Part shown: positions 585-36,600 of the stretch, piece by piece | Position numbering within the stretch: position 1 is the stretch's first letter | Layout of the letters: each line of letters opens with the position of its first letter | DNA from: Lama glama | Lineage: Eukaryota | Assembly: GCA_028534125.1 (NCBI GenBank) | Contig: CM052816.1 | Coordinates: forward strand, 101,742,001-101,806,000 | Length of the DNA stretch: 64,000 nucleotides | Direction: 5' to 3' | Position numbers and translations under genes: made by a program | The notes under the pieces: generated by a model | What the model was told of the DNA's origin: nothing | The model's database searches: none | The model's input: the letters and a program-made list of their open reading frames with translations, nothing else

Positions 585-13887
<13,303 letters not shown>

Positions 13888-13891
<4 letters not shown>

Positions 13892-14261
13892 CACCGGCTC
13901 GGACGCGCCGCTGACCGGACGGGAGGCCCCACCCGCCACCGAGAAGCCCCCGCGCGTGCGTGCCCCAAGCCCAGCCCCGCCCAGCCCCTTACCGGCCCCG
14001 CCCAGCACCGCACAGGTACCGCCCACCGCCCGAAGCCCCGCCCCCGCCGCGCCGTCCGACCCCGAGCCGGGGGCGGGGCCAGAGCGCCGCGGGCTGCTGG
14101 GCGCGCACGCGCGGTCGGCGGCAGCGCGGCGCGTGCACAGCCGGCGCTCGTTCCAGCGGCCCCGCGCGCGCCGCCGTCCCGCACTGCTCAAGCTCGCGTC
14201 GCTGCAGCCGTCGTGCCACGCGCCGCCGCACGCGCTGGAGCAGGAGGAGACGCCGCTGTGA
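13888..14261 (+). CDS. SLC9A3: Putative alternative NHE3 C-terminal coding frame (124 aa, ends -ALEQEETPL*), reached by exon 15->17 splicing
   Basis: Open from the exon 17 acceptor in phase 1, matching the exon 15 donor phase. The last 25 codons all end in G/C. Terminal class I PDZ ligand. No transcript evidence is available here. Confidence 0.5.
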
Positions 14262-14859
14262 CGGCAGCCCATCCGTGCTCTGCACCCACGACCTCGCCCC
14301 GGGGGTGTCTCGCCTCCCAGGAGTCTCCACCCCACCATGGATGCCCCCACCCTGGGTTTGCACACATGACCTCTCCCTGCCCCAGAATGCCCCGCCACGA
14401 CCTCGCCCCCAGGGGTCTCCACCCGCCACGGGTGCGCCCACCTGGGGTCATCCCTTCATGGTCATCCCTGGGTCATTGCCTGGAGTCATCCCCTCCATGG
14501 CCTCACTCCCCAGGAGTCTTCCGGTGGCCTGGAGTAGCCCTGGGCACTCACCCATCCAGGTGAGTGCTCGGATGGACAGGAGCCGGACTCTCAGGGGACC
14601 AAATGTGCTGCAAGGCCTGGAATCTCCGAATTCCTTGGGGTCTGTATGGAGAGGCCCCTCTGGGCCCGGGAGTGGGCCATGTGCCTCCTCCACCTTCTGA
14701 GTGCGGGCATTCTTGCCAGGAGACTCCACTGTGGTCCCTCTGTCCACCTGTCCTGTATTTGAACTGATCTGGCACTTGTGTGTTACTGTTTCCATTGTCA
14801 TCCTGACTCAGGGATATTCTCTGCTTGAGTTCTTGCCACCTCGTGTCCATTTTCATCAG

Positions 14860-14932: not shown

Positions 14933-16706
14933 AGGCTGGCCTCTCTCCAAGCACCCAGGGAGGGCAACAGCCTCCCCCCCAGGGCGGGGTGTGGGGTATC
15001 TTCATGTCCACTCACCCGGTCTTTCAGCCACCTGTCAGATGGGCTACAGGTGCAACCGCAGGAACATCCTATTGGAGCATCCTTTTTGTGCTGAGATGCC
15101 CAGCCCCAGGGCTTGTCCTGCACACCCTAGTCTTGGTGTAGTGACCTCTGGGCACTGGGTGCTGTCTTGTCCCCAGACACCTGGTGTCTGGCCTGAGTGG
15201 TCCTGCCTGACACTGGCAGATGGCCCAGGCTGGTTAGGGGGTTGTGCCAGCCGCATGGGTGTGCCCACACAGCCCCAGCAGAGTGGATGAGGCCTCTGCT
15301 CAGCAGTCTTGTTTAGAATCTCAGCAGGTCTTTCAATGGACCCGGGCCGGACGGTTGCTCAGGCATCTCACCACTGCTGGGGAGCCAAGGGGACTTGGAC
15401 AGAGCCCCCAGTTCTCTGGAGGGGGGAGGTAAGGCACTGTGCAGTGAGGCAGGGAGGTGGCCCTCACCTCCTCAGACGAGGACTTGTGGGGCAGTAAAGG
15501 ACAGTGGACTCGTAGAAGCTTCTCTAAAGCCAGGCTCAGTCCTGCTCAGGGAACCGTCCATGCTGTGCTGAGACCACATTCCCACGATGTAGTTCTCACT
15601 GCGTCACAGGCCAGGATCACAAGCAGTTTGTGGTTTCAGAGCTGCACATCGATCTCTTATGGGAAGTTTACACTTTGCTGTTGAGAAAAACACTAGACAG
15701 CAGGGAAGGCGCAGTGTTCACCCAGTCGGCTCTGTAGGCTGATGGCGCATCTGCTCTCTCCTGGAACCACTGGCCCAGTCGTCACAGTACAGGAGGGACA
15801 TGCGCTTTCCAGGGCTTGTTCCCCACACTCACATCCACTTTGAGCAACCCCGTGAGCACAAAATCCAGCCATTGTCTGCCTAACAAAACCTGGAGGAAGG
15901 TACAAGCTCTGCCTACACTCGGCGGGAGTGGGTCGTCCGGAGTCCACAGCCTGGCTGGTCCAGCATCTCCAGCTGCCTTAACAACTCCCTGGACCGCTGG
16001 CTGATTCACCGCTGCAGAGCCGGTGGCTGAGCTGAGGAAAGTGGCTTCGGGGCGGTTCCTGGACGCCCACTGGACGCTGCAGATACTAAACCGCCAGGTG
16101 ACAAACCTCTCCTGGGCCAGTTCTGTGGCCGGTGTCCTCTGTGGTGGGTGGGCAGGTTTCCTGTTTGTTGACCTGCACAGCTAAGTACAGATACCCGAAC
16201 GGAGGTTCCAGGCCATTTCGGCTTGAGACTGGTCTGGTGACACAGTGTTATAAACCCTAGTGCTGGGGGTACGTTTCATAGCGTTGTAAAGCAATGTAAA
16301 CAAAGTCTTATGAATGTATTTCCTTAGGAAAACCATTATCAATTCTTTTATTAGGAAAGAATTCCTATTTATTTAATACTGAACTTTGGCCTACTTTGTG
16401 GTAGACACAAATTTAGGAGTCATTTCTCACGTCCGTATTTTCTTGAAAATAATTTTGTAACAGTGCTCACACAACTGTGCTGTTGGTCTTCTATTGTGAA
16501 AGGAGACTTAATGGAGGAACTTCACTGAAATGTATTTTAAGTTAGGAGGGGTGAAAATTGTGGATGCTAATTCTGTGAATGTAATCTAGTCAGACTGTGT
16601 AACCCTAATCACAATCAACGTGCCTTAAAGAGCTGCCCCACGTGCTGTTGGCAGTGTCCGGGCAGGGGGCCACCACAGACCCTACAAGGACTGCTTGATA
16701 AAGCCT

Positions 16707-16712
16707 ATTAAA
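16707..16712 (+). terminator. SLC9A3: Likely SLC9A3 distal polyadenylation signal (ATTAAA)
   Basis: Lies at the end of an AT-rich UTR-like block (about 16260-16740) that includes TATTTATTTAA at 16366-16376; followed by U/GU-rich sequence. Confidence 0.5.
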
Positions 16713-34799: not shown

Positions 34800-35620
34800 T
34801 GCCCTTCTGCGCTCACGGGGCTGGTGCGGCCGCCGTCTGCCCTCGCTCCCTTCCCTGATCACGGCCGCCGGCGCGCGGGGCGGGACACACGGCCGTCAGA
34901 GGCGGCGCCCGACGGCCCCCTGCGGCCGCGCGCCCCCTCGCCCGGCGCCGCGCAGGCAGCTCTGCACCTGCTCCTTCCCTCCGTCCCCTGGCGCGTCGTC
35001 AGCCTCCCCTTGGAGCCCCACAGCCGCCCGCGCCGCCTCCGGGCCGCGCCCGCACCCGCTGGAGCCCGGGGAAGGGACAGCGGGAGGGGACAGCGACCCC
35101 CACCCAGCACCGCCCGCCCGCCGGACCGCGGCAAGCCCCTCACCCTGCGCGCCGCCGCCGCCGCCCGGAAATTAGCGGCCGAGGGCGCTTCCGCTTCCGG
35201 CCTCGCGACCGGAAGGGCGGGGCCTGGGCGGCCCTGGCCGCAGGCAGAGGGCTGCGGGCACCGGCACCGGAGGGTCCTCGCTGAGCGTGGGCGAGATCGC
35301 GGGCCCGGGGGGCCCGGGAGCGGGGAGCCCGGGGCTGACGCGGCGGGGCTGGAGCCCGAGGGGCGCAGAGCCGGGCGGCGGCGCGGTGAGGGGCAGGGGC
35401 GCGAGCGCGCGCAGCGGACACACAAACACACGTGGACACGCAGACACACACACCACGTGAACATACACAGACCCCGTACACGCCCCCCCACGCCACACAC
35501 ATGGGAGCGCGTGCGGGTGAGCACACGCGTGCAGACGGGGCAGGGCGGGGAGGTGGAGGTGCGGGAGCCCCCATTGCTGCCTCCGAGCACACCACAGCCT
35601 GCCAGTCAGCCGAGCGGCGG
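34800..35620. promoter_or_regulatory. EXOC3: EXOC3 CpG-island, TATA-less, likely bidirectional promoter
   Basis: Tandem ETS/GABPA sites (cttccgcttccgg 35188-35200; ccggaag 35209-35215), TCGCGA core at 35203-35208, GC box at 35215-35222. The human orthologous promoter is shared with EXOC3-AS1. Confidence 0.85.
35144..35200 (-). other. EXOC3: EXOC3 non-coding exon 1 (5' end approximate)
   Basis: Donor GCGCAGG|gtgagg at 35144/35143 inside the CpG island, next to ETS motifs. Confidence 0.7.
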
Positions 35621-35699
35621 TCACCTTCCAAGGCCCATCACCTTACTAATCCCTCTGCGAGCTGATCCCAGTATTGTCTCATCTGTCCCTAGTAATTTA

Positions 35700-36600
35700 T
35701 GAAAACAGCACCAAACTGAGCAATGAAGGATGTGAACAAAAAGGTAAAATTATGTTTGAAATTATAACTGTAGAACATTTGGAAACATCCTCAGTGCAAG
35801 AGTGGGCCAGGGAAAACAAAGATCCCCCAAAAGCAATTTATCCCAGGTACTGGGATCCTTGGGTCAGGAAAGGCCCCCCAAGAACTCCTAGCTGGGGGCC
35901 TGCACTTCACTTGGGTTTCGTGCCTCCTCAGCCTGGAAGCTCTCACTGAAACCCCTCAGCAGAAGCAAGTCAGGAGCATTTCTAGAAAGGGCCCCCCAGC
36001 CTCCGTGGGAGTAAAGAGAGGAGGGAGATGGTGTGTTTCTACAGCGTCCTGAGATCCTGTCTATTCTGGGAGAACAGGAATATTGATTAGCCTTGGCTTC
36101 AGCTTTATTAGATCTGCAGAGAAAAATGCAAGCATCCCATAGGGACAGTAGGAAAAGAAACGCCCAAGGATCATGTGTAACTACAAAATAAGGGCTAGAA
36201 ATATGTTCAAATATACCAATTTTCAGAACACAAGTAAATGGATTTTAAGACAATCAGTTATTTATGAGAAAAACATATGAATCATAAATGGACAGAATGA
36301 TTAGATGTGGAGGGGGTTTGCACACTGGCTAGTCCAGGCTCAAAAAAGCTGGTGTGGCAATATTAATACTGGAAAAAATGGGCTTTAAGTCAGAGGAGCT
36401 GTCAGAGTTATTTTAAGATGCAAAACACATAAACCATGAAGAAGAAGATAGTTTGCTGTGCTAAAATTTTAAACTGGTACTTTTTTAAAGAAATCAGTAA
36501 ATGAAAACACAAGCCACAGACTGAGAGAGAATCTATAACTAACGAAATGCTGCTTCCCTTAATTTTAAAATAACACCCACAATTCAACCAAAAAGGGGCA
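35700..36600 (+). mobile_element. Degenerate LINE-1 fragments between the AHRR 3' end and the EXOC3 promoter
   Basis: A-rich, with L1 ORF2-like aaaaagctggtgtggcaatattaatac...ctttaag. Confidence 0.45.

What the first reader, a model, noticed from the sequence alone, without database searches (positions are those of the whole stretch)
13888..14261. Hidden coding frame in the NHE3 '3'UTR': exon-16 skipping would give a new 124-aa C-terminus ending in a PDZ ligand (-EETPL)
Seen in sequence: exon 15 ends in phase 1 (TCA G|gtgaga, 12636). Joining it directly to the exon 17 acceptor (cccgtag|GT, 13888) reads GGT GAC ACC GGC TCG GAC..., giving ...[33 protein letters not shown]...RRVHSRRSFQRPRARRRPALLKLASLQPSCHAPPHALEQEETPL*, open to TGA at 14259-14261. 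This replaces the 82-aa GIDNPV...STHM tail. The last 25 codons (14184-14258) all end in G/C while 14 of 25 have A/T at position 2. That periodicity matches the real SLC9A3 exons and is not expected of plain CpG-island DNA. Exon 16 has a weak donor (CAT|gtaact). Established knowledge: E-T-x-L-COOH fits the class I motif bound by NHERF/PDZK1-family PDZ domains (compare CFTR DTRL), and these are the main NHE3 scaffolds. Inference: an unannotated NHE3 isoform with altered PDZ anchoring and trafficking. It would escape NMD because the stop is in the last exon. This would also explain why an exon contributing only 4 coding nt has been kept. Alternative: the same frame is translated from a separate transcript starting in the local CpG island, using a near-cognate CTG (13911) or GTG (13956).
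Basis: partly seen in the sequence, partly recalled or inferred. Interest (0 to 1): 0.9.

Follow-up and report, generated by a model that had tools for sequence, protein, structure and literature searches.

The report
Conserved alternative NHE3 tail in exon 17
The supposedly non-coding last exon of the sodium/proton exchanger gene SLC9A3 (NHE3) holds a second reading frame that mammals have kept under protein-level selection; skipping exon 16 would give NHE3 a different tail ending in -ETPL, which gene-prediction pipelines already list in many species but which none of my seven searches of the open-access paper library found described.

Summary
Exon 15 ends in phase 1 at 12636. Joined to exon 17 at 13888, the frame runs 124 codons to TGA at 14259-14261 and ends in EETPL.

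Openness alone means little. The stretch is a 76% GC CpG island, all six frames are open there, and shuffles give P = 0.36. The period-3 argument is also weak.

Protein databases hold full-length NHE3 models with exactly this exon 15-to-17 join and tail. They come from cat, leopard, Geoffroy's cat, mink, squirrels, horse, marmoset, gibbons, gorilla and gelada, and a human entry is listed. Titi monkey and desman models carry the same tail after a different upstream junction.
- Tails are 108-143 aa long, with 27 distinct gap intervals, all in frame.
- The last 61 aa are 90-98% identical to the window.
- LEQEETPL-stop is the same in all 19 tails read.
- A dog model reads the block out of frame, which let me infer dog bases. 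Of 12 differences, 9 fall at codon position 3 and all 9 are synonymous.

So this is a real, selected coding frame, most likely an alternative NHE3 C-terminus. It is not new to the databases.

I found no paper on it in seven searches. PDZ binding is untested, and the canonical -STHM tail is already a PDZ ligand.

The parts
12526..12636 (+). SLC9A3 exon 15, encoding ...[14 protein letters not shown] and ending in phase 1 (last base G). Donor is CAG|gtgaga.
12921..13164 (+). Exon 16, the canonical 82-aa tail GIDNPV...PESTHM. It is skipped in the alternative isoform. Its donor CAT|gtaact lacks G at -1 and at +5.
13165..13887 (+). Intron 16. If retained, the canonical stop TAA lies at 13166-13168. 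An in-frame TGA at 13854-13856 closes the alternative frame 11 codons upstream of the acceptor.
13888..14261 (+). Alternative-frame coding part of exon 17: 124 codons including the split Gly codon, plus TGA.
13888..13922 (+). Conserved start of the tail, [12 protein letters not shown]. It is present in all 19 sequences compared, except that the desman and titi monkey models start SDTGSD. The first bases also supply G+TGA of the canonical stop.
13923..14075 (+). Variable Pro/Ala-rich linker. Its length differs between species, always by whole codons. It carries five CCGCCC GC boxes at 13977-14038.
14076..14258 (+). Conserved 61-aa block, GPERRGL...HALEQEETPL. It is 90-98% identical to the window in all 16 other tails aligned.
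14247..14261 (+). ETPL plus TGA: a class I PDZ-ligand-like C-terminus, unchanged in all 19 tails read.
13600..14450 (.). CpG island (GC 0.76, CpG observed/expected 0.87) enclosing the alternative frame.

Best explanation
Window 13888-14258 is a real protein-coding frame kept by purifying selection in placental mammals. It is read when SLC9A3 exon 15 (phase 1) is spliced directly to exon 17, skipping exon 16. The product is NHE3 with its last 82 residues (...STHM) replaced by a tail of about 124 residues. That tail has a conserved 12-residue start, a variable proline/alanine-rich linker predicted to be disordered, and a near-invariant basic 61-residue block ending in -ETPL. Shown here: the frame, its homology to annotated exon 15-17 isoforms, in-frame indels, synonymous-biased divergence, and the conserved stop. 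Inferred: that the junction is used in this species; that the tail is translated; and that -ETPL with the basic block changes which PDZ scaffolds (NHERF family, PDZK1, SNX27) and kinases act on NHE3, and so changes its trafficking.
For: (1) A search of 1.84 billion representative proteins with 13890-14123 found an 850-aa cat NHE3 whose sequence runs ...TATDSPS|GDTGSD...EQEETPL. (2) Two region-limited searches listed 18 further full-length NHE3 models of 774-1117 aa that match this tail. They come from Felis, Panthera, Leopardus, Mustela, Sciurus (two species), Equus, Callithrix, Symphalangus, Hylobates, Gorilla, Theropithecus, Plecturocebus and Galemys, and a Homo sapiens entry is listed. Most are RefSeq 'isoform X' models. 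A dog model was also listed, but its tail goes out of frame (see point 5). In the RefSeq and UniProt models I read, the tail follows exon 15 directly. (3) In the alignment of 17 tails, lengths are 108-143 aa with 27 distinct gap intervals, all whole codons. The C-terminal 61 aa are 90-98% identical to the window, against 46-83% in the linker. (4) Across 19 sequences the invariant columns include the whole run AHARSAAARRVHSRRSFQRPRA and LEQEETPL. (5) The dog Ensembl model P0016 translates the block in the +1 frame. This fixes the dog bases at alternative-frame positions 2 and 3 over 14065-14190. Of 12 differences from the window, 9 are at position 3 and all are synonymous; 3 are at position 2. 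In the core 14100-14190 the count is 7 against 0 (binomial P = 0.008). So the DNA diverges while the protein is held. (6) Similarity between cat-family and window sequences begins about 9 codons before the acceptor and is absent further upstream, as expected for an exon boundary. (7) The frame has no ATG, so it needs an upstream coding exon. Exon 15's phase supplies exactly this frame.
Against: RefSeq and Ensembl models can be spread between species by protein homology, so the number of models is not the same as independent transcript support. No Mus or Rattus model was found. The dog model is out of frame within the linker. The synonymous-bias test rests on one species pair and on inferred bases. 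The same position-3 bias would also fit the antisense frame that shares position 3. I found no orthologous DNA, so I could not test whether conservation stops at the TGA. I found no Ribo-seq, mass-spectrometry or published evidence.
Confidence: 0.8

Rival explanations
1. The stretch is conserved non-coding DNA, either a 3'UTR element or a CpG-island promoter (for example for an antisense transcript such as human SLC9A3-AS1). It merely happens to be open in one frame, and the exon 15-17 models are annotation noise.
For: It is a CpG island with five GC boxes in the linker. Open frames are expected at this GC content. SLC9A3-AS1 exists as a human lncRNA.
Against: All 27 gap intervals preserve the frame. 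Dog-window differences concentrate at codon position 3 while amino acids stay fixed. The stop sits right after an invariant octapeptide in 19 sequences. A promoter role for the linker could still coexist with coding.
Confidence: 0.07
2. The frame is translated as a separate small protein of about 100-135 aa, from its own transcript starting in intron 16 or the CpG island, and not as an NHE3 tail.
For: RefSeq XP_069412239.1 (bighorn sheep, 133 aa) and UniParc UPI0007A6EABD (132 aa, with an unrelated 24-aa N-terminus) are stand-alone models of this frame.
Against: The window has no ATG in the frame between 13857 and 14258, and an in-frame TGA at 13854. The sheep ATG reads ACG in the window. The GTG at 13956 is not conserved. 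Protein conservation starts at the first codon of exon 17. The N-terminus of UPI0007A6EABD has no counterpart in the window.
Confidence: 0.06
3. Selection acts on an antisense open frame (13652-14422, minus strand, 256 codons) that shares its third codon position with the claimed frame.
For: The minus frame is open and shares position 3. Whole-codon indels and position-3 changes would preserve it too. By my own hand reading of the changes inferred, not by a separate tool run, 8 of the 9 position-3 changes would also be silent in it.
Against: It runs on into intron 16, where cat-family and window sequences are no longer alike. Its product is low-complexity Gly/Ala/Ser/Arg. Every database model recovered is on the plus strand, although my queries were plus-frame peptides, so antisense models could not have been found. 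The plus frame ends in a recognised motif exactly at an invariant stop and matches exon 15's phase.
Confidence: 0.03
4. It is a chance open frame with no function.
For: P = 0.36 for this open length in shuffles, and longer open frames exist in other frames here.
Against: The last 61 aa are 90-98% identical across at least six mammalian orders, with an identical C-terminal octapeptide.
Confidence: 0.02

Closest known systems
Predicted 'sodium/hydrogen exchanger 3 isoform X1/X2/X3/X5' (RefSeq Gnomon models in Felis catus, Panthera pardus, Leopardus geoffroyi, Mustela lutreola, Sciurus carolinensis, Equus przewalskii, Symphalangus, Hylobates, Gorilla) and UniProt TrEMBL entries such as A0ABI7VPM8_FELCA
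   Same: The same exon 15-to-17 join (DSPS/A|GDTGSD). The tail is homologous, with 71-83% identity over the first 78 aa to the best database hits. The last 61 aa are 90-98% identical, and the -LEQEETPL end is the same.
   Different: These are automatic models in other species. I found no model or read evidence for the window's own species. The linker differs in length and sequence.
Canonical NHE3 (SLC9A3) C-terminus ending -STHM
   Same: The same protein up to exon 15. [quoted passage not shown]
   Different: The last 82 aa are replaced by an unrelated 124 aa. The end is -ETPL (Leu at position 0, acidic residues at -3, -4 and -6) instead of -STHM. The epitope of at least one C-terminal antibody (rabbit NHE3 aa 809-831, PMC4472014) lies in exon 16 and would miss the isoform.
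Alternative C-terminal splice forms that exchange PDZ ligands in transporters and channels (for example PMCA a/b variants; from my own knowledge)
   Same: Exon skipping shifts the frame in the last exon and yields a different tail and C-terminal ligand.
   Different: Here the alternative frame lies in what is treated as 3'UTR of the main mRNA. No experiment exists for it.
CFTR -DTRL and other D/E-S/T-x-L ligands of NHERF PDZ domains (from my own knowledge)
   Same: -ETPL fits the pattern acidic residue, Ser/Thr, any residue, Leu at the C-terminus.
   Different: Binding was not tested. Pro at -1 is unusual for these ligands.

Membership tests
Annotated exon 15-17 NHE3 isoform (RefSeq 'isoform X' type) | Exon 15 ends in phase 1, and a direct join to exon 17 gives ...DSPS-GDTGSD... 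| tested here: met
   Window sequence compared with models P0006, P0009, P0010, P0026 and others.
Annotated exon 15-17 NHE3 isoform (RefSeq 'isoform X' type) | The tail is homologous over its whole length and ends in LEQEETPL-stop. | tested here: met
   E-values from 2e-14 to 2e-7 for the first 78 aa. Alignments.
Annotated exon 15-17 NHE3 isoform (RefSeq 'isoform X' type) | Transcripts with the 12636-to-13888 junction in this species. | not testable with these tools
Protein-coding sequence under purifying selection | Indels between species are whole codons. | tested here: met
   27 distinct gap intervals in 17 tails, all in frame. One exception is the dog model P0016, which is out of frame in the linker.
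Protein-coding sequence under purifying selection | Substitutions are biased to synonymous sites. | tested here: met
   Dog against window, with dog bases inferred from the +1-frame translation. Nine differences at position 3 (all synonymous) against three at position 2. In the core block the count is 7 against 0, P = 0.008. This is one species pair only.
Protein-coding sequence under purifying selection | Evidence of translation (Ribo-seq or peptides). | not testable with these tools
   No such data were within reach. No paper contains the string EQEETPL.
Class I PDZ-binding C-terminus (x-S/T-x-hydrophobic-COOH) | Ser/Thr at -2 and a hydrophobic residue at 0, directly before the stop. | tested here: met
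   E-T-P-L followed by TGA at 14247-14261. It is unchanged in all 19 tails read.
Class I PDZ-binding C-terminus (x-S/T-x-hydrophobic-COOH) | Physical binding to a PDZ domain. | not tested
   Complex prediction takes reference chains only from bacteria, archaea and phages, and the window holds no PDZ protein. The test needs a pull-down.
Independent small ORF or separate gene | A conserved start codon of its own. | tested here: not met
   No ATG in the frame from 13857 to 14258, and TGA at 13854. The sheep ATG is ACG here, and GTG 13956 is not conserved.

The most novel reading that the evidence does not exclude
Exon 17 of SLC9A3, treated as 3'UTR, is a coding exon that selection has kept across placental mammals. 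It gives NHE3 a second regulatory tail of its own: a near-invariant basic 61-aa module ending in -ETPL. This tail would recruit a different set of PDZ scaffolds or sorting factors than -STHM and direct a subpopulation of NHE3 to a different compartment or tissue. It would also be invisible to at least one antibody raised against the canonical C-terminus (PMC4472014).
Probability: 0.45. Interest if true: 0.75.

Novelty: new member of a known kind. Interest (0 to 1): 0.6.

Why it matters
NHE3 carries out most intestinal and proximal-tubule sodium absorption. Its regulation through the C-terminal domain and PDZ scaffolds has been studied for decades on one tail. A second tail under strong protein-level selection in at least six mammalian orders would mean that part of NHE3 biology has been missed, covering trafficking, kinase control and tissue-specific roles such as the male reproductive tract. 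At least one C-terminal antibody (rabbit NHE3 aa 809-831, PMC4472014) does not see this tail, and constructs built on the canonical cDNA do not carry it. It also gives a clean genetic handle. Edits in this frame lie in the 3'UTR of the canonical mRNA, so the isoform can be removed without changing canonical NHE3 protein. The sequence itself is not new to databases. What is new is the evidence that it is under selection.

Tried and rejected
There is therefore no junction evidence. The look-up of sequencing runs showed only that RNA runs hold at most 0.50 of the words of 12500-14500, which does not resolve splicing.
- Metagenome scans: a 27-aa query was too short. The 78-aa query matched patterns but no relative. 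The degenerate LEQEETPL-stop DNA pattern found nothing.
- Pfam found no family for either tail piece or for exon 16.
- AlphaFold2 on the sheep 133-aa model with 19 aligned rows gave mean pLDDT 59 and pTM 0.13. It showed only a low-confidence helix at GAHARSAAARRVHSR, so I treat the tail as disordered and did no fold search.
- Period-3 composition as proof of coding was rejected as not decisive.
- Chance ORF was rejected on conservation.
- The N-terminus of UPI0007A6EABD has no counterpart in the window.
- Literature: searches for the peptide string, for NHE3 splice variants and for testis variants found no description. The SLC9A3-AS1 papers are cancer lncRNA studies with no bearing on coding.

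Full report
**What is in the sequence**

The window carries SLC9A3 (NHE3) exons on the plus strand.
- Exon 15 is 12526-12636 and ends ...TCA G|gtgaga, which is phase 1.
- Exon 16 is 12921-13164 and encodes the canonical tail GIDNPV...PESTHM.
- Its end reads THM-stop whether intron 16 is retained (ATG TAA) or spliced at CAT|gtaact to GTGA at 13888.

**Is it more than chance on its own? No.**

The stretch lies in a CpG island (13600-14450, GC 0.76, CpG observed/expected 0.87).
- All six frames are open there for 106-265 codons.
- In dinucleotide-preserving shuffles, 36% stay open for at least 123 codons from the acceptor.
- A period-3 pattern as strong as that of the last 25 codons occurs at six places in the window. 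Three are in known NHE3 exons. One is in intron 4 (4904-4927). One is in another CpG island (about 34962). One is here.

**Restrictions that shaped the work**

No reads were laid, so the junction could not be tested.
- The window was searched as 13890-14123 and 14178-14258 only.
- Proteins of other species were used as queries only over the part upstream of the homologous stretch: region 723-805 and region 756-837.
- Local scripts, alignments and one structure prediction are not searches, and they did include that stretch or its homologues.
- The joined exon 15+17 model of the window was never sent to a search.
- A protein labelled Homo sapiens (P0021) appeared in the hit tables. I did not print, align or search with it.

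**Cross-species evidence**

The first 78 codons were searched against 1.84 billion representative proteins. Four hits came back.
- Three are ORFs from genomic contigs that read through the acceptor.
- One is an 850-aa cat protein named 'Sodium/hydrogen exchanger' (UniRef100_A0ABI7VPM8). It runs ...TATDSPS|GDTGSD...HALEQEETPL, which is exactly the predicted join.

A word-index search also found RefSeq XP_069412239.1 (bighorn sheep, 133 aa, 'uncharacterized protein') and UniParc UPI0007A6EABD (132 aa).

Two region-limited searches with the cat and squirrel tails listed full-length NHE3 models of 774-1117 aa with this tail.
- The species are Felis catus, Panthera pardus, Leopardus geoffroyi, Mustela lutreola, Sciurus carolinensis, S. 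vulgaris, Equus przewalskii, Callithrix jacchus, Symphalangus syndactylus, Hylobates moloch, Gorilla gorilla, Theropithecus gelada, Plecturocebus cupreus and Galemys pyrenaicus. A Homo sapiens entry was also listed, as was a dog model whose tail goes out of frame (see below).
- Most are RefSeq 'isoform X1/X2/X3/X5'.
- No Mus or Rattus model appeared.

The isoform is therefore already present in automatic annotation.

**Signs of selection on the protein**

In an alignment of 17 tails:
- Lengths range from 108 to 143 aa.
- There are 27 distinct gap intervals, all whole codons.
- The linker is only 46-83% identical to the window, while the last 61 aa are 90-98% identical.

With 19 sequences, the run AHARSAAARRVHSRRSFQRPRA and the end LEQEETPL are invariant.

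Gene models built on a 15-17 junction would be reported whatever the tail reads. The fact that nearly all of them reach the same C-terminus is therefore not simply an effect of selecting for open frames.

The one exception is the dog Ensembl model (P0016). It slips into the +1 frame inside the linker. That model was useful.
- Its +1-frame residues fix the dog bases at positions 2 and 3 of the alternative frame over 14065-14190.
- Of 12 differences from the window, 9 are at position 3 and all are synonymous.
- Three are at position 2.
- In 14100-14190 the count is 7 against 0 (P = 0.008).

So about a fifth of third positions differ while the amino acids are held. This is protein-level constraint, not frozen DNA. 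It also suggests that the dog frameshift is an assembly or model error, because the dog block is still conserved in this frame.

**Where the frame is entered**

- Similarity between the cat-family ORF (P0005) and the window begins about nine codons before the acceptor, at the polypyrimidine tract, which reads as ALTPxPPxG. It is absent further upstream.
- The window has TGA at 13854-13856 and no ATG between 13857 and 14258.
- The sheep ATG is ACG here, and GTG 13956 is not conserved.
- Exon 15's phase gives exactly the conserved frame.

An NHE3 tail is therefore far more likely than a stand-alone small protein.

**The antisense frame**

An antisense frame (13652-14422) shares codon position 3 with the claimed frame, so codon-position tests cannot exclude it. 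I rate it unlikely for two reasons.
- It runs on into non-conserved intron.
- Its product is low-complexity.

No model of it turned up, but my queries were plus-frame peptides and so could not have found antisense models.

**What the tail looks like**

- Pfam finds no family.
- AlphaFold2 with the alignment gives mean pLDDT 59. It shows a single weak helix over GAHARSAAARRVHSR and no fold.
- This fits a disordered regulatory tail carrying short motifs.
- The end E-T-P-L has Thr at -2 and Leu at 0, which is the class I PDZ pattern, with acidic residues at -3, -4 and -6.
- From my own knowledge, NHERF PDZ domains favour D/E-S/T-x-L, and SNX27 favours acidic residues upstream of the motif.
- The basic block has Ser residues with Arg at -3 (RVHS), typical of basophilic kinase sites. 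This is inference only.
- The canonical -STHM is itself described as a putative class I PDZ motif, studied with SNX27 (PMC4472014). The isoform would exchange one ligand and its context for another.

**Literature**

- No paper holds the string EQEETPL.
- Searches for NHE3 splice variants, alternative C-termini and testis variants found no description.
- A recent review states only that SLC9A3 has 17 exons (PMC10573352).
- The searched library covers open-access papers only.

**Verdict**

The thing is a real, conserved alternative coding frame, most likely an alternative NHE3 C-terminus. It is known to annotation pipelines but not, as far as I could find, to the literature.

Not shown here: use of the junction in this species, translation, and PDZ binding.

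Noticed in passing
window 13977-14043: Five CCGCCC GC boxes (Sp1-type on the minus strand) lie inside the variable Pro/Ala-rich linker of the tail, within the CpG island. The linker may double as a promoter, for example for an antisense transcript like human SLC9A3-AS1.
   Followed up: partly
protein P0016 (Canis lupus familiaris, UniProt A0A8C0TR99), homologous to window about 13890-14190: The dog Ensembl model reads exon 16 in a shifted frame, joins it to exon 17 at the CAT|GTGAC splice, then slips into the +1 frame within the linker. The C-block is nevertheless conserved at the amino-acid level in the alternative frame, so this is probably an assembly or model error.
   Followed up: partly
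protein P0002 (UniParc UPI0007A6EABD): A 132-aa model from an unidentified, more divergent mammal carries the tail with two extra in-frame deletions in the conserved block. Its 24-aa N-terminus (MTFMGLARRD...) matches neither NHE3 exon 15 nor anything in the window.
   Followed up: partly
proteins P0006, P0011, P0013, P0020, P0022: Other models combine the tail with further differences. The cat 850-aa model lacks the exon that encodes [30 protein letters not shown] in the window (about 7740-7830). The cat and leopard 928-aa models are 48 aa longer upstream. A squirrel 952-aa model joins part of exon 16 (...SFLLAD) to the tail.
   Followed up: no
window 4816-5493: A 226-codon open frame in GC-rich intron 4 shows a period-3 pattern at 4904-4927 as strong as the one in the finding. 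It has no visible relation to NHE3.
   Followed up: no
window 34800-35700: A second CpG-island-like stretch has long open frames on both strands (292 and 243 codons) and a local period-3 pattern at 34962-34966. It may be the promoter or first exon of a neighbouring gene.
   Followed up: no
window 16340-16710: The only plus-strand poly(A) signal after the tail is ATTAAA at 16707. This implies an exon 17 of about 2.8 kb. Two minus-strand AATAAA signals at 16347 and 16368 suggest the 3' end of a convergent neighbouring gene overlapping it.
   Followed up: no
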